A DNA stretch of 64,000 bases, from contig CBFFRQ010000018.1 in the NCBI GenBank assembly GCA_965644315.1, forward strand, positions 1,054,001 through 1,118,000, in the 5' to 3' direction. The stretch comes from Caecitellus pseudoparvulus (lineage: Eukaryota > Protista > Bigyra: Bicosoecida). A model generated the notes under the pieces. It was not told the origin of the DNA. It worked only from the letters and a program-made list of their open reading frames with translations, and did no database searches. This document shows positions 52,417 to 64,000 of the stretch, in pieces (the first letter of the stretch is position 1; every line of letters starts with the position of its first letter). Position numbers and translations under genes: made by a program.

Positions 52417-54291
<1,875 letters not shown>

Positions 54292-54598: not shown

Positions 54599-56086
54599 TC
54601 ACTCGCGACGGGCGGCCTTCGCCTCCGATGCGCAAGACATGTCAGTGGGCTGGCCACCTTTCTCGCGTGGACGCCGGCGCCCACCGAGGCGTGGCAATGT
54701 CTGGCTGGCGGCAGCCATGTTCTGCAGGAAGTGCATCAGACGGCTCATGTCTGCCACATTGGCAGGTGCAGGACCTGCGGCTGCCGCTGCCGACGGAGGA
54801 ATAGCGGGCAACACAAAGGGCAAATTTGGGTCGGCTCGAGCCAGGGCCAGATTCGTGGTAGTGCACGGTACCTCCTTGCCGGTGGCCGCCCTAGCCGTGA
54901 ACAGGTCCGGTGTAAGCTTCTTCACCACGGTAATGTCCGAGGGGAAGGCGGCGTACGCACCCATGCTCGGCACGTGCACTCGCAGACGCAGCCGAAGGTG
55001 GCCCACGTCAGACGAGATGGGCAGGTGGTGCAGGGAGGGCAGGAGGTACACGACGCCAGGCTGGGGTGCTCCGCCCAGTGCATGCGTCAGGCTCTCTACG
55101 AGGGCCTGGTCGCTCATGCGACCGCGTTCCAGAGGGGCGCATCCCTCATCACGCTTGGTGACGTCATCCTGGATGACCAGGGCCTTGCCATCCAAGGTCT
55201 CGCTGAAGTACACCAGGGAGAAGACGGCGCGAACTGCTTCCACAGGCTGCAGGTCATGGTTGACGGAAGTCGTCTTGGTGCGGCGGTACACTGCTCTGCC
55301 CAGCTCGTCATGCAGCTGGAGGTCGACACAAGACAAGAGCTCAGTGGGGAAGAAATCCACCATGCGGGTTGCTTTCCCAGGGATGAAGTTGTACTCGCCC
55401 GTGTACTTCCTCATCGTCTGGTCAACGCCTGCACTGGCGCCCCACACTTGCACCACAGGCCGGCGCGTCTTGGACGAGCATATGGCCAAGGTGCAGTGTT
55501 GGAGGGCTGCGTGCGTGTCCCCCACTGAGCCGTCTTGGGGCAAGATATTGCGGACATCACCCACCACGGTGGGAAGGTGCCCGACAATGGTCAAGCCCTT
55601 GGGTTCAGGTGAGGCAGCGGAGCCGCTAGGGCTTTCACCCTGACCACTCGCAGCCAAGTGCTCAGACACACAGCCTGGCGGGGTAGCTTGGATACCCCCA
55701 ACGGGAGGTATAGCAATGGAGCAGGCTTCCGCGAGACTCTCGGCTTGAGCCTGGAGCAGGGGGTTTGGCTCAAGCCCGGAGCACGGCACAGGCTGCCCTG
55801 GTTGCACGCCAGTTGTGCTTTCACCCTCAGCACCTCCGGCGCCTCCCTGCTGCTGGCCAGCGCCTCCTGGGAGTAGCCCTTCCCACGAGCCGGTCTCGGC
55901 GTGCGAAGGTGTTCCTACAGGGGGTAGGAGTGTGTGGCTGTCCACAGGATCCAGGATCAGCAAGCCTTGCGGGTTGGGGGTCGTTGAAATTGAATCAAAT
56001 ACAAGCGACTCCACGCTGACACCAGGGGTTGCCTGAGGTGCGGATACTTGAGGAACAAAGCCCGTGGAATGGTTCTGGCTCGCCAT
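54599..56086 (-). CDS. Hypothetical protein, tandem paralog 1; putative Ig-fold (p53-like/CudA-like) DNA-binding domain
   Basis: The ATG at 56086 follows a ccgcag acceptor. The conserved core ends in ISSDVGHLRLRLRVHV...SDITVVKK, and there is a C-terminal basic NLS-like RRRPR. Confidence 0.65.
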   Translation of the reverse strand: MASQNHSTGFVPQVSAPQATPGVSVESLVFDSISTTPNPQGLLILDPVDSHTLLPPVGTPSHAETGSWEGLLPGGAGQQQGGAGGAEGESTTGVQPGQPVPCSGLEPNPLLQAQAESLAEACSIAIPPVGGIQATPPGCVSEHLAASGQGESPSGSAASPEPKGLTIVGHLPTVVGDVRNILPQDGSVGDTHAALQHCTLAICSSKTRRPVVQVWGASAGVDQTMRKYTGEYNFIPGKATRMVDFFPTELLSCVDLQLHDELGRAVYRRTKTTSVNHDLQPVEAVRAVFSLVYFSETLDGKALVIQDDVTKRDEGCAPLERGRMSDQALVESLTHALGGAPQPGVVYLLPSLHHLPISSDVGHLRLRLRVHVPSMGAYAAFPSDITVVKKLTPDLFTARAATGKEVPCTTTNLALARADPNLPFVLPAIPPSAAAAAGPAPANVADMSRLMHFLQNMAAASQTLPRLGGRRRPREKGGQPTDMSCASEAKAARRE

Positions 56087-57139
56087 GTCGTCCGTCTGCG
56101 GAAAGGCGGCCGAGTTCGGCTTGACACGACAGCAGAAACGGCGTCGAAACCCACCACGCCAAGCGGCGTGCAGCCCGCGCTCCGCGCAGTCACACACAAA
56201 CCACCGCACGACACAGGCACACATGCAGCAGACATGCAGTGTGGAGACACTTGCCGCAGGTGGGCGGGTGCGAGGGCGTGCGACAAGCACCCGTTCGCAG
56301 CGAGGTGCCGTTGGGGACTGTCGTCACGCACGGGTGTCGGGGGAGATGACTGGTGACGGGGAAGGTCGGGGGTGCGCGAAGGGCGGGGTGGTGCGGTGAG
56401 AGGTTGCAGGAGCTGAGAACAAGTGTACGGAGAGGTAAATGTGGCAAGTGCGAGTGACTGTGGCCTGTGGCGACCCCGCCCAATTTCCGCGGGGGGGCGA
56501 GGGGGTGCTCGCAAGGTGCACGGTGCTGGAGCAAGCCTTCTGTGACCCCATCTCACACACCTGCCACCTTCCCTGCATCGTAGCTTGGCCTTCCTGCCCT
56601 TTCATCTCCACTGAACGCGTGCTCATCCGCACGGTATGCCGGCATCGCGAGGAGTGGGCTCAAGTTCCCGTCCCGCTGGCGCTGCACAGGGGTTCCCCCC
56701 CACCCCCCACACTGAGAACTGCCTGTGCAGGCCAGAGCAGCGCCACCCACAGACCAGCGTAGCATGTGGCAGGCGTGCGTGCCATTGCCTTGCACGCTGG
56801 CGCTGTGACTTCACGCAGTGTTGCTGGAGCCATGCTCGGCTCTCGCGATGGGGCACAGGCGCAGCTCGGCGACGGTGTCATGCAGAGGCAGTCTTCACGC
56901 CAAGCCTGGCACTGCTCGGCGTCGCCCACGCTCCTGTGGTGTGGTGCGTGCAGTACAAAGGAAGTGTATTTGTTGCATCGAGGCCAGTGAATGACCTCTC
57001 CACAATAAATAAAAAAACCGCCCGTAGTATAGGATACACGGGCAACTGAGGTGAGGGGTGCCAACGGTCCACCTCCCGGCGAAGTGATGCACACGTTGCA
57101 GAACTTGTTCGCATCTGCGAGACAAGCCTTGCTAGTGCT

Positions 57140-58669
57140 TCACTCGCGCCGGGGGGCCTTGGCTTTGGAATGTTGCTCATCCTCGTCCGCTGTGTAAACG
57201 GCGTGATAGAGCATTTCGGCATACAGGTCGACTTCGTCGCGTGGACGACGGCGACCACCGAGGCGTGGCGATATATGGCTGGCGGCAGCCACGCTTTGGA
57301 TAGAGTGCATCAGACGGCTCATGTCTGCCACATCCACGGGTGCAGGACCCGCTGATGCAGGCGGGGCATCTGGCACAGTAGTAAGAGGGGGTTGCGGGTC
57401 AGCACGGGCACGGGCTAGGGGCGTGTCAAAGCACGGTACCTCCTTGCCTGTCGTTGACGTTGCCTCCAGCAGGTTCGAGGTCAGCTCCTTCACCACGGTA
57501 ATGTCCGAGGGGAAGGCGGCGTACGCACCCATGCTCGGCACGTGCACTCGCAGACGCAGCCGAAGGTGGCCCACGTCAGATGAGATGGGCAGGTGGTGCA
57601 GGGAGGGCAGGAGGTACACGACGCCAGGCTGGGGTGCTCCGCCCAGTGCATGCGTCAGATTCGCCACAAAGGCGTGGTCGCTCATGCGACCGCGTGACAG
57701 AGGGGCGCATCCTTCTTCGCGCTTGGTGACGTCATCCTGGATGACCAGGGCCTTGCCATCCAAGGTCTCGCTGAAGTACACCAGGGAGAAGACGGCGCGA
57801 ACTGCCTGCAAGGGCTGCAGGTCATGGTTGACGGAAGTCGTCTTGGTGCGGCGGTACACTGCTCGGCCCAGCTCGTCATGCAGCTGGAGATCGACACAAG
57901 ACAGGAGTGCAGGGGGGAGGGAATCCACCATGCGGGAGTCGCCCGGGGTGAAGGAGCACTGGTCCAGGTTGCTGAGCATGAGGTGCTCGATGGCAGTGCT
58001 CGCGCCCCTCAGTTGCAGCAATGGACGGCGCATGTTGGACGAGCACTTGACCAAGGTGCAGTGTTGGAGGGTTGCGCGGGAGTTCCTCACCAGCCCATCC
58101 TGAGGAAGGATGTTGCGAGGGTCACCCACCACGATGGGGAGGTGCCCGTCAATGGCCAAGCCCTTGGGTTCAGGTGAGGCAATGGAGCCGCTGGGGCTTT
58201 CGCCGTGCCCACTAGCAGCTGAGTACTCGGACGCAGTGCCAGGCGGGTTTGCCTGGGAAGGCTCCACCGGAGGAACGTCAGGGGCGAACGCTGCCGTTGG
58301 GCTCGCCGCTTGGACCTGCTGTGGTGTAGAAGCCTCTGGCTTGGGCAATGAGACAAGGTCGACTTGCACGTCATCCTCATCGTCGAAGTCACCCTCGGCG
58401 CCAAGCATCTCGGGTGCGCCCCGCGGAAGTCCACAAGCGGGAGGAGGTCGGGCATCAGGGGTTGCACTTGCCGTCAGGCCAGCTGGGGCTACACCTTCCC
58501 AGAGGCCCAGGTGGTCTTGTGAGGGTGCTCCTCCACGGGAAAGGAGTACAACGTCTGGCCCGGTTTCAGAGGCGAGTGAGTCAAGCCGGACAGCATGGAG
58601 TGGAAGGAGTTGGGCTGGGAGTGGGAAGATTTCTCTTCCAATTTCCGTGAAATGGTGAGGGTTGGACAT
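57140..58669 (-). CDS. Hypothetical protein, tandem paralog 2; putative Ig-fold DNA-binding domain
   Basis: 509-aa ORF collinear with paralog 1. The core is near-identical at the DNA level, offset by 2568 bp. Confidence 0.65.
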   Translation of the reverse strand: MSNPHHFTEIGREIFPLPAQLLPLHAVRLDSLASETGPDVVLLSRGGAPSQDHLGLWEGVAPAGLTASATPDARPPPACGLPRGAPEMLGAEGDFDDEDDVQVDLVSLPKPEASTPQQVQAASPTAAFAPDVPPVEPSQANPPGTASEYSAASGHGESPSGSIASPEPKGLAIDGHLPIVVGDPRNILPQDGLVRNSRATLQHCTLVKCSSNMRRPLLQLRGASTAIEHLMLSNLDQCSFTPGDSRMVDSLPPALLSCVDLQLHDELGRAVYRRTKTTSVNHDLQPLQAVRAVFSLVYFSETLDGKALVIQDDVTKREEGCAPLSRGRMSDHAFVANLTHALGGAPQPGVVYLLPSLHHLPISSDVGHLRLRLRVHVPSMGAYAAFPSDITVVKELTSNLLEATSTTGKEVPCFDTPLARARADPQPPLTTVPDAPPASAGPAPVDVADMSRLMHSIQSVAAASHISPRLGGRRRPRDEVDLYAEMLYHAVYTADEDEQHSKAKAPRRE

Positions 58670-59364: not shown

Positions 59365-62300
59365 ATGGCAGCGGCCAGTGAGTATTTCCTGGCGCCGCGC
59401 GAAGTAGCAGCCACCACACCTCTGGTTGCCATGCTCAGGCACTGTTGCACACCAACACGCCGGAGAGCTGGAGGCCGAGACGCCCATCGCACGGGCCATG
59501 GAGACGGGGGGAGTGACCCCTGATGTCTTCAGTGTGTACAAGCGCACGCCAGCGAACAAGGCTTCGGACCTGCTGGTGCAGGCTTTGGAGCACGAGGGCG
59601 TGGAATATGTCTTCGGCGTGCCGGGTGAGAGCAGCTCGTCTGACGTGGAAGCCGGCGGCCCAGCTCAGGGTGCCCTGCGTTGCCTGTGCAGGTGAGGAGA
59701 ACCTGGACTTCTTGGAGTCCATGCGCACAAGCAGCTTGCAGCTGGTGACCACGCGCCATGAGGCCAGCGCGGCGTTCATGGCAGCGACGTATGGCAGGCT
59801 GACCGGCAAGGTGAGGCACGCTGGGCTGCCGCAGCACGCCAAGCGCTGCAAACTGGACCTCGCACGCCTTGCACAGCTGTCTGTCGTCTTGACCACGCTG
59901 GGGCCTGGTGCCACCAACACCAGCACCGCCTTGTCGTATGCCCTGCTGGGGGGCATGCCCCTGCTCATCGTGACGGTGCGTTGGACATGCCATCCCGCTG
60001 CGTCGCCACTTGCGCCAGGCCAGGACGTGCATGTCTCCCTCCGCGCGCAGGGCCAAAAGCCCATCCGGCACTCGAAGCAAGGGGCGTTCCAAGTCATCAA
60101 TGTCGTGGAGCATTTCGCGCCCATCACGAAGTTCACCAAGGTCATCGAGGACTGGCACAAGATCCCTTCGCTGGTGCGCGAGGCATCCAGGCTGGCACTG
60201 GAGCAGCGGCCTGGCCCGACCCACCTGGAGCTCCCTGAGGACATTGCCGCTCAAGAAGTGGATGGAGAGGCATTCTTGCTGCCACGGTACCGAGTGCGCC
60301 GCCCAGTGCCCGATGAGAAGGCTGTCCGCATCGCAGCTGAGATGGTGCTGGCATCCAAATCCCCGCTGCTGCTGATCGGCGCCGGCGCACAGCGCACACG
60401 CACCCAGACGATGCTGAGGAAGTTCGTGGATGAGCTTGGCATGCCGTTCATCACGACGCAAATGGGCAAGGGCGTCGTGTCAGAGGCACACAAGCAGAGC
60501 CTGGGCACGGCTGCGTTGAGCGCGGGCGACGCGGTGCATGCTGCACTGGAGGCGAGTGACTGCATCATCATGGTGGGGCACGACAAGATCGAGAAGCCGC
60601 CTCTGTTCATGCACGGCGACGACAAGCGCTCTGTGATCCACATCAACCACTCTGATGGGCAGGTGGACGACATCTACGCCCCGCACTGGGCCGTCGTGGG
60701 CGACATCGCCAACGCCATCTGGCAGCTGGGGCAGCAACTGCAGGCCGCCATCACGGCCAAGGGTGGGCGGTCCGGCTGGGACTTCCGGTTCTTCTACCGT
60801 GTCCGGGATGCTCTGCAGGCCGCCCTGGCAGCCACCGCTGCCGACGAGGCCTTCCCCATGCAAGTGGAGCGCGTGGTGGCTGACGTCCGGGCAGCCCTGC
60901 CCGGGGACGGCGTGGTCACCCTGGACAACGGCCTGTACAAGCTGGCGTTTGCCCGCAGCTACAAGACGTACGAGCCGAACACGCTGCTGCTGGACAACGC
61001 CCTGGCCACGATGGGGGCGGGCCTGCCCAGCGGCATGGCAGCGGGGCTCGTGGACCCCAACCGCAAGGTCGTGGCGGTGTGCGGGGACGGCGGCTTCATG
61101 ATGGGCAACAACGACTTTGAGACTGCCGTGCGCCTGCGCCTGAACCTCGTGCTGGTCGTGCTGAACGACGGCGCGTACGGCATGATCAAGTGGAAGCAGG
61201 CGGGGCACGGCTTCGCCGACGGCGGCGCGCTGGACTTTGGCAACCCCGACTTTGTCAAGTTCGCGGAAGCCTTCGGCGCCAAGGGGCACCGCATCCGCTC
61301 CACGGGCGAGTTCAAGGGCACGCTGCAAGCGGCTCTGGACGAGGGCGGCGTGCACCTCCTGGACGTCCCCATGAACTACAACACGTTCAACCACACCCTG
61401 AAGGAGGGCATGGCCGAGCTCCGCCGCGAGCTGGATGCAGCCCTGCAGGAGGTGCAGGCGGACGATGGGCCCTGGACTGTGGCGCACGCCAGTGCGCCTG
61501 GCACTCCTGCCAGCAGCCAAGGTGGCGAGGCGGAGGCTGCTCCTGCTCCGTCGGCCTCTGCGACCCCCGGCGCCTTCACAGCCCCTGACGCGAGCGAGGA
61601 GCGGTGCCCTGATGCCGTCCGCCTGGGCGTGCCGGCAACATACCCCATGTACGTCGCCGGCAAGGCAGTGCAGCCCAACACAGACTTGGCCGTGAGCAAC
61701 AAGATGACCGGCAAGGTCGTCGCCCGGGTGCCCCTCGCGTCTGCCGACGACATCGAGGCTGCCATTGCTGCTGCAGACAGCGCCAAGGAAGCCATGGCGG
61801 CGCTGCCCGCCTTCGAGCGCAAGCGCATCCTGCAGAGCTGCGTCGCATCGTTCAAGGAGGACGCCGAGGCGCTGGCTGTGGCGCTGGCCCTGGAAGCCGG
61901 CAAGCCCATCAAGGACGCGCGCGGCGAGGTGGCCCGCCTCATCGACACGTTCGAAGTGGCGGCGGAGGAGGCCACGCGCATCTACGGCGAGTGGATGCCG
62001 CTGGACATCTCTGCCCGCGCCGCCGGCACACAGGCCATCACGCGCAAGTTCCCCATCGGGCCCGTGTCCATGGTGTCCCCCTTCAACTTCCCCCTGAACC
62101 TGGCGGCACACAAGGTGGCGCCAGCCATCGCGGCGGGGTGCCCCTTCGTGCTCAAGCCCGCCAGCCGCACACCGCTGGGCGCCCTCATCATCGGCAAGGC
62201 CCTCGTCAAGGCGGGGCTTCCGGAAGGCGCCTTCTCCATCGTGCCCTGCCCCCGCGAGGCCGCTGACGCGTTCACCACCGACGAGCGCTTCAAGCTGCTG

Positions 62301-63086
62301 TCGTTCACGGGCTCCCCTGGCGTGGGGTGGGCCATGAAGGCGCGGGCAGGCAAGAAGCCCGTCGTGCTGGAGCTGGGGGGCAACGCCGCTGCCATCGTGG
62401 ACAGCGCCGTGGACCTGCCCCACGTCGTGAAACGCCTGGCTCTGGGCGCCTTCTACCAGTCGGGGCAGTCCTGCATCGGCGTGCAGCGCATCTTGATCCG
62501 CTCCACGGTGTACGAGGAGGTGAAGGCTGCCCTGGTGCGGGAGGTGGGCAGCCTGAAGGTGGGGGACCCCCTGGAGGAAGACACGTTCGTGGGCCCCCTC
62601 ATCACCGCCAAGGATGCTGATCGCATGGAGGAGTGGACGGAGGAGGCCCTGGCCGCCGGCGCCAAGGTCGTCGTGGGGCACCGCAAGGAGGGCTCCTTCT
62701 ACTGGCCCACGCTGCTGGAGGGCGTGCCGCCGCACTGCAAGGTGTACCGGGAGGAGGCCTTTGGCCCCGTGGCGGTGCTGGAGCCGTACCAGACGTTTGA
62801 GCAGGCCGTGCAGCGCGTGAACGACAGCAAGTTCGGCCTGCAGGCGGGCGTCTTCACGGAGGACCTGCGGCGCGCGTTTTACGCGTACGAGCACATCGAC
62901 GCGGGTGGCGTGGTGGTGGGGGACGTGCCATCGTTCCGCGTGGACTCCCAGCCGTACGGCGGCGTGAAGGACAGCGGCCTGGGCCGGGAGGGCATCCGCT
63001 ATGCCATCGAGGACATGACTGAAACCCGCATCATGACCCTGCGCAATGTGGGCGCCTTGCGGGGGGAGGCTGCTGCTGCGCAGTGA
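59365..63086 (+). CDS. Fusion: ThDP-dependent acetolactate-synthase-like enzyme (2-oxoglutarate decarboxylase-like) + ALDH21-type aldehyde (succinic semialdehyde) dehydrogenase
   Basis: Exons 59365-59377, 59439-59624, 59692-59810, 59877-59975 and 60051-63086. ThDP motifs: ALEHEGVEYVFGVPGEENL, TRHEASAAFMAATYGRLTG, TLGPGATN, LLDNALATMGAGLP, GDGGFMM...LND. ALDH motifs: GKPIKDARGEV, SPFNFPLNL, LKPASRTP, FTGS, ELGGN, GQSC, EEAFGP, PYGGVKDSGLGREG. Confidence 0.92.
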
Positions 63087-63196: not shown

Positions 63197-64000
63197 ATGG
63201 AGGGGGCCTTCGGCCCCTCAGGGCCCGAAGCCCTGCACACCAAGCTCGACGAGCTGCGAGCGGCGGCACAGGGGGGCGACGCCCAGCTGGCGCAAGTTGT
63301 CAGCGTCCTGGACGCGCTGTGTTTGGCCCTCGACATGCAGCCGCCCATTCCCCCAGCGGCGTACTTGGCCGGCTTGCTAGCGCTCGTGGAGCGCTCGGGG
63401 GCTGGCAGTGCCCAGGAGGTGCGTCATCGAACACAGAGCCGGCACCCTGTTCCCTGCCGCGCCTGCCTCTGAGCTGTGCAGGAGCAGGCACGACGACCCC
63501 TGAGCCCCGCAGGTCTTTTATCTACTCTCGGTGATTGTGCCGTTTGTCCCCGTCTCTGTGCTGCGCTCCCACGCGGACAGCACGACGAAGCTCTTCACGG
63601 CAGCGCTGCAGGTGCGGAAATTGCTCCCCCCACACACCGCACGCAAACAGCCCCCGCCGCACTTGGCCCCGGCTTTCACAGGCACCTGGCGTGACGGGTG
63701 ACCCCATCATGTTGCGCAGTGTCATCGTGTCCCTCTCTGCCTGTCTAGCTGCGCTCGATGTGGACGAGGGCAGCTGGGGCAGCGGTGGGCGCCTGGGCCT
63801 CTTCGGCGCCCTGCTGAACCTGTGCGTGGACCCCCGGGACCGCGTGCGGCGCGCGGCGCAGAGCGGCGCACACCGCATCCTGTGCCGCCACGCCCTCGCC
63901 GCCAAGCGCTCCGAGACCCTGCTCACCAAGGCCTCCGTGCAGTTCTTCTCGGGCATCCTGCGCGCGACGACGCTGAAGGACTCCGTGCGCTCCGTGCACA
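63197..64000 (+). CDS. RRP12: RRP12-like ribosome biogenesis HEAT protein, 5' part (spliced, truncated by the window)
   Basis: Exon pieces AAYLAGLLALVE, LYLLSVIVPFVPVSVLRSH, LRSVIVSLSACLAA and LLNLCVDPRDRVRRAAQ match the RRP12 N-terminal pattern. Confidence 0.7.

What the first reader, a model, noticed from the sequence alone, without database searches (positions are those of the whole stretch)
59365..63086. Candidate one-polypeptide TCA bypass: 2-oxoglutarate decarboxylase-like ThDP enzyme fused to an ALDH21-type SSA dehydrogenase in a eukaryote
Seen: a single open reading frame joins a complete ThDP enzyme to a complete ALDH through an Ala/Pro-rich linker (about 61420-61640) with no stop. 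Introns occur only in the first ~700 nt. The N-terminus is acidic rather than presequence-like, and there is no PTS1 at the C-terminus. Established: the ...EGVEYxFGxPGEENL... subclass of 'acetolactate synthase large subunits' includes cyanobacterial 2-oxoglutarate decarboxylase (OgdA), which works with an SSA dehydrogenase to bypass the OGDH complex. The ALDH half (GKPIKDARGEV, RIYGE.IPLDISAR, KFPIGPVSMVSP, LKPASRTP) has the signature I recall for ALDH21, whose moss member is an NADP+-dependent SSA dehydrogenase. Inference: a bacterial two-gene operon was transferred, fused and intronised, giving a probably cytosolic route from 2-OG to SSA to succinate plus NADPH that channels the reactive aldehyde. 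I know of no described fusion of this kind, but cannot check this.
Basis: partly seen in the sequence, partly recalled or inferred. Interest (0 to 1): 0.92.

Follow-up and report, generated by a model that had tools for sequence, protein, structure and literature searches.

The report
Fused oxoglutarate-to-succinate shortcut enzyme
This protist gene joins two enzymes in one protein that probably turns 2-oxoglutarate into succinate plus NADPH, a citric-acid-cycle shortcut best known from cyanobacteria, and the same fusion sits in ferns, liverworts, green and red algae without, as far as I could find, having been described.

Summary
Observation confirmed: a five-exon, 1,150-aa gene whose last exon holds the rest of a PRK08322-family ThDP enzyme, an 88-aa linker and a full ALDH21-type dehydrogenase, with no stop. 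A relative's intron-less contig gives the same fusion and four matching intron sites. The ALDH half keeps the moss ALDH21 succinic-semialdehyde residues (R121, Y296, R457). The ThDP half is not the assayed cyanobacterial OgdA subtype but an unassayed sister subtype (about 36% identity). Indirect evidence still points to 2-oxoglutarate: 61 of 74 assessable bacterial orthologues sit directly before an ALDH, from three clades, two with proven SSA dehydrogenases; glutamate-synthase or glutamate-dehydrogenase genes are the commonest other neighbours; and this genome shows no ilvC, ilvD or acetolactate decarboxylase. Corrections: the fusion is not local but shared with ferns, liverworts, zygnematophytes, chlorophytes, a red alga and labyrinthulids; bacteria made a separate fusion; mosses keep a truncated ThDP half; OGDH is present, so this is a parallel route; channelling is unsupported. 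No paper on it was found. RNA reads could not be checked. The scan had noted only the ALDH half of this same stretch.

The parts
59365..59377 (+). Exon 1 (start codon, 13 nt, phase-1 intron follows)
   Evidence: same start and intron site in the relative's mRNA-like contig
59439..59624 (+). Exon 2: 40-aa N-terminal extension and start of the PYR domain up to the PG of the PGEEN motif
   Evidence: the intron after it is at the same site and phase in Coccomyxa viridis
59692..59810 (+). Exon 3: TPP_enzyme_N with the RHE motif (ThDP-activating Glu, E50 of Microcystis KGD; motif at 59754)
59877..59975 (+). Exon 4: TPP_enzyme_N, LGPGATN motif
60051..61379 (+). Exon 5, ThDP part: central and C-terminal domains of a PRK08322/NF006187 enzyme, DNGxYK subtype; Lys at 60939 and 61194 (K386 and K471 of Microcystis KGD), Met 61011, GDGG Asp 61086
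61380..61643 (+). Exon 5, 88-aa linker: helix, then low-complexity Ala/Pro/Ser stretch
   Evidence: pLDDT below 50 for the matching residues 619-648 of the relative's model
61644..63086 (+). Exon 5, ALDH21-type dehydrogenase to the stop; R121 at 61935, R228 at 62253, E267 at 62370, Y296 at 62454, catalytic C302 at 62472, R457 at 62937 (moss numbering)
59378..59438 (+). Intron 1 (61 nt, GT-AG)
59625..59691 (+). Intron 2 (67 nt, GT-AG)
59811..59876 (+). Intron 3 (66 nt, in frame, no stop)
59976..60050 (+). Intron 4 (75 nt, in frame, no stop); introns 3 and 4 explain the false 1,187-aa ORF from 59523

Best explanation
A bifunctional, probably cytosolic 2-oxoglutarate decarboxylase / succinic-semialdehyde dehydrogenase. 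The N-terminal ThDP/Mg enzyme decarboxylates 2-oxoglutarate non-oxidatively to succinic semialdehyde (SSA) and CO2 (inferred). SSA diffuses to the tethered ALDH21 domain, where two arginines and a tyrosine hold its carboxylate and the catalytic Cys oxidises it to succinate with NADP+ (residues shown; activity inferred from the assayed moss enzyme). Net: 2-OG to succinate + CO2 + NADPH, with no CoA, lipoate or GABA, running beside a normal OGDH. The fusion fixes 1:1 expression and keeps the sites near each other rather than forming a tunnel (inferred). It derives from a bacterial two-gene operon of the same order and is old, being shared by streptophytes, chlorophytes, a red alga and stramenopiles; a single origin is compatible with the trees but not proven.
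For: ALDH half: 594 bits to moss ALDH21 against 290 or less to other SSADHs; R121, Y296, R457, which bind the SSA carboxylate (bioRxiv 10.64898/2026.01.13.699213), are kept here and in nearly all fusions. ThDP half: NF006187 551 bits, cut-off 509, on exon 5 alone; AlsS 298, AHAS 214. It shares with cyanobacterial KGD the two lysines docked on 2-OG (K386, K471; PMC10418658), which E. coli AHAS and AlsS lack. Bacterial orthologues: ALDH directly downstream in 61 of 74 assessable loci, from three clades: ALDH21 (9, plus 1 distant), a second clade that keeps R121/Y296/R457 (49), and the Sad clade that also partners cyanobacterial OgdA (2). DVGAHK-type and DNGxYK-type ThDP genes share the same ALDH partners. 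The commonest other neighbours are a PF01645 glutamate-synthase-family gene (10 loci, co-oriented, 8 within 100 nt) and NADP-glutamate dehydrogenase (5 loci). Own genome: no ilvC, ilvD or acetolactate decarboxylase found; no bacterial/plant-type GAD over cut-off and no clear GABA transaminase.
Against: No member of the DNGxYK subtype has been assayed in anything I could read; it is only 35-37% identical to the OgdA proxies and differs at pocket positions Q254, V382, A384, H385. The 2-OG contacts come from docking on a predicted model, and K386/K471 were not among the mutants reported. The closest solved ThDP relative (13BB) is named acetolactate synthase. The genome has OGDH E1 and an ALDH5/GabD-type SSADH, so need is not obvious. 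One Burkholderia ALDH21-type structure is NAD-bound (5JRY), so NADP preference is likely, not certain. Expression in this organism was not checked.
Confidence: 0.7

Rival explanations
1. Same chemistry, different acidic substrate: the pair decarboxylates and oxidises another 2-oxo-dicarboxylate, such as 2-oxoadipate to glutarate, 4-hydroxy-2-oxoglutarate to malate, or oxaloacetate to malonate.
For: The DNGxYK pocket differs from OgdA at four positions; the Arg pair selects for a terminal carboxylate, not strictly for chain length (inference); the genome already has OGDH.
Against: Partners include Sad-clade and ALDH21 SSADHs; glutamate/2-OG enzymes are the recurrent neighbours and no lysine or hydroxyproline catabolic gene recurs among the top neighbour clusters; assayed PRK08322-type KGDs are strict for 2-OG; the genome has a second, divergent E1-like gene that may handle 2-oxoadipate (inference).
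Confidence: 0.17
2. The ThDP half is an acetolactate synthase or pyruvate decarboxylase as database names say, and the ALDH removes acetaldehyde or a by-product.
For: Family name of NF006187 and of PDB 13BB; best fold matches of the ThDP half are catabolic ALS structures; it is the only ThDP enzyme of this class found in the genome.
Against: No ilvC, ilvD or acetolactate decarboxylase in this genome; 37 of 43 bacterial carriers have a separate true AHAS and only 3 have acetolactate decarboxylase; AHAS and AlsS motifs are missing; acetolactate is not an ALDH substrate, and an Arg-lined pocket does not suit acetaldehyde (established knowledge).
Confidence: 0.06
3. The fusion mainly detoxifies or signals: ALDH21 clears SSA or stress aldehydes from other sources, and the ThDP half is a low-activity passenger or carboligase.
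For: Moss ALDH21A1 is stand-alone, stress-induced and its knockout raises GABA and Glu; some cyanobacterial KGDs have low activity.
Against: All ThDP catalytic residues are kept; both halves are conserved at about 45-57% and 51-64% identity across kingdoms; fusion arose twice with different ALDH clades; no clear GABA shunt here to supply SSA.
Confidence: 0.06
4. Two separate genes or an assembly artefact; the linker is not translated.
For: No reads of this organism were seen.
Against: Single stop-free exon with coding-like GC3; intron-less contig of a relative encodes the full fusion; about 30 full-length eukaryotic fusions, several from transcriptomes.
Confidence: 0.01

Closest known systems
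Cyanobacterial 2-oxoglutarate decarboxylase OgdA/KGD (SYNPCC7002_A2770, sll1981, MAE_06010) with its SSADH
   Same: Same ThDP superfamily branch, apart from AHAS; E50, K386, A408, M410, GDGG, D462, Y465, K471, Y531 kept; always paired with an aldehyde dehydrogenase; same proposed net reaction.
   Different: Sister subtype (DNGxYK against DVGAHK), 35-37% identity, four pocket changes; partner is ALDH21, not Sad-type, and lies downstream; one polypeptide; host has OGDH.
Moss ALDH21A1 (PDB 5MZ5, 5MZ8, 5N5S), cytosolic NADP+-dependent SSADH
   Same: 594 bits; R121, R228, E267, Y296, C302, R457 all kept; model of the relative superposes at 0.9 A rmsd.
   Different: The moss enzyme is stand-alone and explained by the GABA shunt. 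Its Marchantia orthologue (P0085, 841 bits to 5MZ5) is a separate paralogue from the Marchantia fusion (P0077), so the fused ALDH21 is a second, unassayed paralogue.
Bacterial 'acetolactate synthase large subunit' (PRK08322) + 'aldehyde dehydrogenase family protein' operons, and their fusions (P0033-P0075)
   Same: Same ThDP subtype (51-58% identity) and gene order; ALDH21-type partner in Alteromonas, Paraglaciecola, Pirellulaceae, Verrucomicrobiales, Alcanivoracaceae.
   Different: The bacterial fusions use another ALDH clade (34-39% identity), have 19-38-aa linkers and form their own clades in both trees: an independent fusion. None assayed.
Euglena and Mycobacterium 2-oxoglutarate decarboxylases
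   Same: Same reaction, and Euglena is a eukaryote.
   Different: Phylogenetically distinct from the acetolactate-synthase-like OGDC (PMC4224347); not fused to an ALDH (own knowledge).
Known ALDH fusions PutA, AdhE, P5CS
   Same: An aldehyde-making or aldehyde-using enzyme joined to an ALDH; P5CS also arose from an operon (PMC12041015).
   Different: Different partner folds; a ThDP-ALDH fusion did not appear in the passages of that review that I read; no sign here of a rigid channel.

Membership tests
PRK08322/NF006187 ThDP family | Score above the curated cut-off | tested here: met
   551 bits against 509 on exon 5 alone
Cyanobacterial OgdA/KGD clade | Groups with OgdA in a tree | tested here: not met
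   Separate starred clade (100) from the DVGAHK clades in both trees; OgdA represented by metagenomic proxies that match 17 of 17 published MaKGD positions
Cyanobacterial OgdA/KGD clade | ThDP/Mg residues E50, M410, D435, D462, Y465 | tested here: met
Cyanobacterial OgdA/KGD clade | Docked 2-OG pocket Q254, V382, K386, A408, L467, K471 | tested here: inconclusive
   K386, A408, K471 kept, L467 is Met; Q254 is Ser, V382 is Asn
Cyanobacterial OgdA/KGD clade | Decarboxylates 2-OG to SSA and not pyruvate | not testable with these tools
   needs an assay
ALDH21 | High identity to ALDH21A1 and placement in the ALDH21 clade | tested here: met
   594 bits to 5MZ5; 58% to the Marchantia orthologue; inside the starred ALDH21 clade
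ALDH21 | SSA-binding R121, Y296, R457 and catalytic C302, E267 | tested here: met
ALDH21 | R228, recalled as the NADP+ specificity residue | tested here: met
   Arg present; its role rests on my memory of Kopecna 2017, which was not readable
ALDH21 | SSA dehydrogenase activity with NADP+ | not testable with these tools
   needs an assay
Biosynthetic AHAS (TIGR00118) | Score above cut-off; AHAS motifs; ilvC and ilvD downstream pathway | tested here: not met
   214 against 538 bits on exon 5; motifs differ; ilvC and ilvD not found
Catabolic AlsS (TIGR02418, NF006378) | Score above cut-off; PGAKID motif; acetolactate decarboxylase partner | tested here: not met
   269 and 298 bits on exon 5 against 551 and 510, full-length Riccia half also below both; PGEEN instead; PF03306 not found
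Substrate-channelling bifunctional enzymes (PutA type) | Fixed domain interface with a tunnel | tested here: inconclusive
   Monomer model of the relative has pTM 0.57 and a disordered linker; linker 55-132 aa; oligomer not modelled

The most novel reading that the evidence does not exclude
An overlooked, ancient eukaryotic pathway: protists, algae and seed-free land plants carry a cytosolic, GABA-independent 2-oxoglutarate decarboxylase bypass on one polypeptide, apparently absent from flowering plants; mosses split it, so the much-studied stress gene ALDH21 has an unrecognised upstream partner (the 'uncharacterized' Physcomitrium ThDP protein), and thousands of bacterial 'acetolactate synthase large subunit' genes of the DNGxYK subtype are really 2-oxoglutarate decarboxylases.
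Probability: 0.55. Interest if true: 0.85.

Novelty: new variant of a known kind. Interest (0 to 1): 0.72.

Why it matters
The 2-OG decarboxylase bypass is known from cyanobacteria and, with unrelated enzymes, from Euglena and mycobacteria. If the inference holds, a single-chain version is part of central carbon and NADPH metabolism in ferns, liverworts, several algal groups and heterotrophic protists, where databases mislabel it as NADP-GAPDH, lactaldehyde dehydrogenase or acetolactate synthase. It offers a source of SSA for ALDH21 other than GABA, testable at once in Marchantia and Physcomitrium, gives a function to a large misnamed bacterial family, and would be a one-gene 2-OG-to-succinate module for metabolic engineering.

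Tried and rejected
The joined spliced model was not searched; searches were exon by exon, trees used exon 5, and the fold used the relative's protein P0270. The 1,187-aa ORF from 59523 was rejected as the gene model: it reads through two in-frame introns. Literature: nine searches; the combinations ALDH21 + 2-oxoglutarate decarboxylase and ALDH21 + acetolactate synthase returned no paper, and no other search surfaced the fusion; Kopecna 2017 is not held. Named cyanobacterial OgdA sequences could not be fetched, so proxies were used. 'Careful' bootstrap trees did not finish; supports are SH-aLRT only, and rows left out are listed. Replacement of a missing OGDH was rejected (26 of 43 bacterial carriers also have it). 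A cyanobacterial or plastid origin was rejected for the ThDP half. Shared introns as proof of one origin: only one of four window introns matches Coccomyxa and none matches Riccia, too weak. The Physcomitrium ThDP locus was not on record. The taxid printed for P0027 resolved to a fungus and was not used.
Full report
Observation. Five exons (59365-59377, 59439-59624, 59692-59810, 59877-59975, 60051-63086) and four short GT-AG introns give 1,150 aa. Exon 5 alone is 1,011 stop-free codons with TPP_enzyme_M, TPP_enzyme_C and Aldedh; exons 3 and 4 hit TPP_enzyme_N. Independent support comes from a relative: contig L236 (run DRR599622, intron-less, so presumably mRNA) encodes a 1,144-aa fusion, and against the syntenic genomic locus L237 it shows introns at the window's four sites plus one more; the window's exons tile its protein without gaps.

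The ALDH half is an ALDH21. Its best solved relatives are three Burkholderia ALDHs (623-629 bits) and moss ALDH21 (594 bits); the next hit scores 301. Reading the printed alignment with an 18-residue offset (515-aa chain; native length from memory), R121, R228, E267, Y296, C302 and R457 are all present. R121, R457 and Y296 bind the SSA carboxylate, and the moss enzyme is a cytosolic NADP+ SSADH with Km 181 uM (bioRxiv 10.64898/2026.01.13.699213). The role of R228 in NADP+ preference is from my memory.

The ThDP half belongs to PRK08322/NF006187 (551 bits, cut-off 509), not to AlsS or AHAS. The family has subtypes. A motif scan gave proxies for cyanobacterial OgdA; L116, L183 and L184 match all 17 residue positions published for Microcystis KGD and its 550-aa length. 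The window's enzyme is 35-37% identical to them and lies in a separate starred clade, which I call DNGxYK after its motif. It keeps the cofactor residues and the two lysines docked on 2-OG (K386, K471), which E. coli IlvB/IlvI and AlsS lack, but differs at Q254, V382, A384 and H385. So it is not a member of the assayed OgdA clade; whether it works like OgdA rests on context.

Context favours 2-OG. Of 80 bacterial DNGxYK loci, 6 end too early to judge; 61 of the other 74 have an ALDH directly downstream on the same strand. The partner is ALDH21-type in 9 (plus one distant relative and one 862 nt away), a second clade in 49, and Sad-like in 2. The second clade keeps R121, Y296 and R457; the Sad-like ones group with the SSADHs next to cyanobacterial OgdA. 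DVGAHK-type ThDP genes also pair with the second clade and, once, with ALDH21. The simplest reading is that all these ThDP enzymes make the same aldehyde, SSA. The most frequent other neighbours are a PF01645 glutamate-synthase-family gene (10 loci in several phyla, co-oriented, 8 within 100 nt; also in Leisingera) and NADP-glutamate dehydrogenase (5 loci). Of 43 carrier genomes, 37 have a separate true AHAS, 3 have acetolactate decarboxylase and 26 have OGDH E1.

In this genome (30.6 Mb) the gene is the only hit for NF006187, TIGR00118 and PF02775. ilvC, ilvD, acetolactate decarboxylase and light-harvesting proteins were not found, which fits a heterotroph that does not make branched-chain amino acids and leaves acetolactate without a use; exon-wise searches can miss intron-rich genes. 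A full OGDH E1 and an ALDH5/GabD-type SSADH are present, whereas no bacterial/plant-type GAD passes the cut-off and the class III aminotransferases look like ornithine, diaminobutyrate and other types. The fusion is therefore a parallel route, not a patch for a broken cycle. The N-terminal extension is near neutral, unconserved and predicted disordered, and most homologues lack it, so a cytosolic location is likely.

The fusion is widespread. The same architecture with an ALDH21 half (51-64% identity) occurs in Riccia, Calypogeia, Marchantia, Ceratopteris, Adiantum, two zygnematophyte gene sets, Ostreobium, Bryopsis, Coccomyxa, Elliptochloris, Rhodosorus, Hondaea and many unnamed eukaryotic contigs. 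Databases call them NADP-GAPDH, lactaldehyde dehydrogenase or hypothetical. No seed plant appeared among the listed hits, in line with the known absence of ALDH21 from angiosperms. About 43 further proteins (P0033-P0075), in bacterial-looking gene context where checked, fuse the same ThDP subtype to the second ALDH clade with short linkers; they form their own clades in both trees, an independent fusion. Eukaryotic fusions fall on one side of a branch in the ThDP trees with weak support (88 and 80) and in one ALDH tree with 97, but the mixture-model ALDH tree leaves the base open. One old origin followed by loss or eukaryote-to-eukaryote spread is thus compatible with the data, not shown. Coccomyxa and Riccia share three intron sites across both halves; the window shares one with Coccomyxa.

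Mosses split the fusion. Physcomitrium and Sphagnum have stand-alone DNGxYK proteins that nest among streptophyte fusions (99 in both models), and the Physcomitrium and related moss-like proteins end in a tail that matches the first 30 or so residues of the liverwort and fern linker, which bacterial stand-alones lack. The assayed ALDH21A1 is a separate paralogue: Marchantia has both a fusion (P0077) and a stand-alone orthologue of the moss enzyme (P0085). Whether ALDH21A1 itself derives from the fusion is unresolved.

Mechanism. Shown: architecture, intact catalytic residues, family placement, gene neighbourhood. Inferred: ThDP-dependent decarboxylation of 2-OG to SSA, oxidation to succinate with NADP+, cytosolic location; confidence 0.7. 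A model of the relative's protein has two confident domains (mean pLDDT 88.7), a disordered linker and pTM 0.57, each domain matching its stand-alone fold; linkers range from 55 to 132 aa. This suggests tethering rather than a tunnel. The main rival is another acidic 2-oxo acid (0.17); acetolactate synthesis is unlikely (0.06).

Novelty. Nine literature searches found no description of the fusion or of a eukaryotic PRK08322 enzyme; a 2025 ALDH review discusses PutA, AdhE and P5CS fusions, and I saw none with a ThDP enzyme in the passages read. Subscription papers, Kopecna 2017 among them, were not searchable. Both reactions and their pairing are known, so this is a new variant of a known kind; its interest lies in its unexpected breadth, including model plants, and in how directly it can be tested. 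The label 'marine stramenopile' for the host comes from earlier scan notes and was not tested beyond the lack of light-harvesting genes.

Noticed in passing
window 54599-56290 and 57140-58669 (minus strand): Two tandem paralogous ORFs (563 and 509 aa, 72% identical over 351 aa, 82% DNA identity over 1 kb) with no Pfam hit for the one scanned, lying between the WD40/CAF1C gene and the fusion gene; no match in the relative's syntenic locus L237, so probably a lineage-specific insertion and duplication.
   Followed up: partly
window 63197-64000 (+): Start of an RRP12 (HEAT) gene only 110 nt after the fusion's stop; same order in the relative.
   Followed up: partly
window about 52468-54120 (minus strand): WD40/CAF1C (RBBP4-like) gene, syntenic with the relative's locus L237.
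   Followed up: partly
P0290-P0299, P0120 (Physcomitrium, Sphagnum and moss-like contigs): Stand-alone 'uncharacterized' ThDP proteins; several end in a remnant of the fusion linker. Candidate upstream partner of moss ALDH21A1.
   Followed up: partly
P0033-P0075; L238: Independent bacterial-type fusion of the same ThDP subtype to a different ALDH clade, all annotated as acetolactate synthase or unnamed; host taxa not determined.
   Followed up: partly
L029, L032, L035, L038, L047, L054, L057, L062, L074, L076, L235: A stand-alone FMN-binding glutamate-synthase-family gene (PF01645) recurs as third gene of the operon, suggesting a glutamate-to-succinate module.
   Followed up: partly
L244 (G000:C8:44480-45721): A diaminobutyrate-2-oxoglutarate transaminase-like gene (TIGR00709 above cut-off), a family best known from bacteria, in this eukaryotic genome.
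   Followed up: no
P0102: A stand-alone DNGxYK ThDP enzyme in a EukProt gene set with Clim ids (Corallochytrium, from memory) that falls outside the eukaryotic fusion group: possibly a separate transfer.
   Followed up: no
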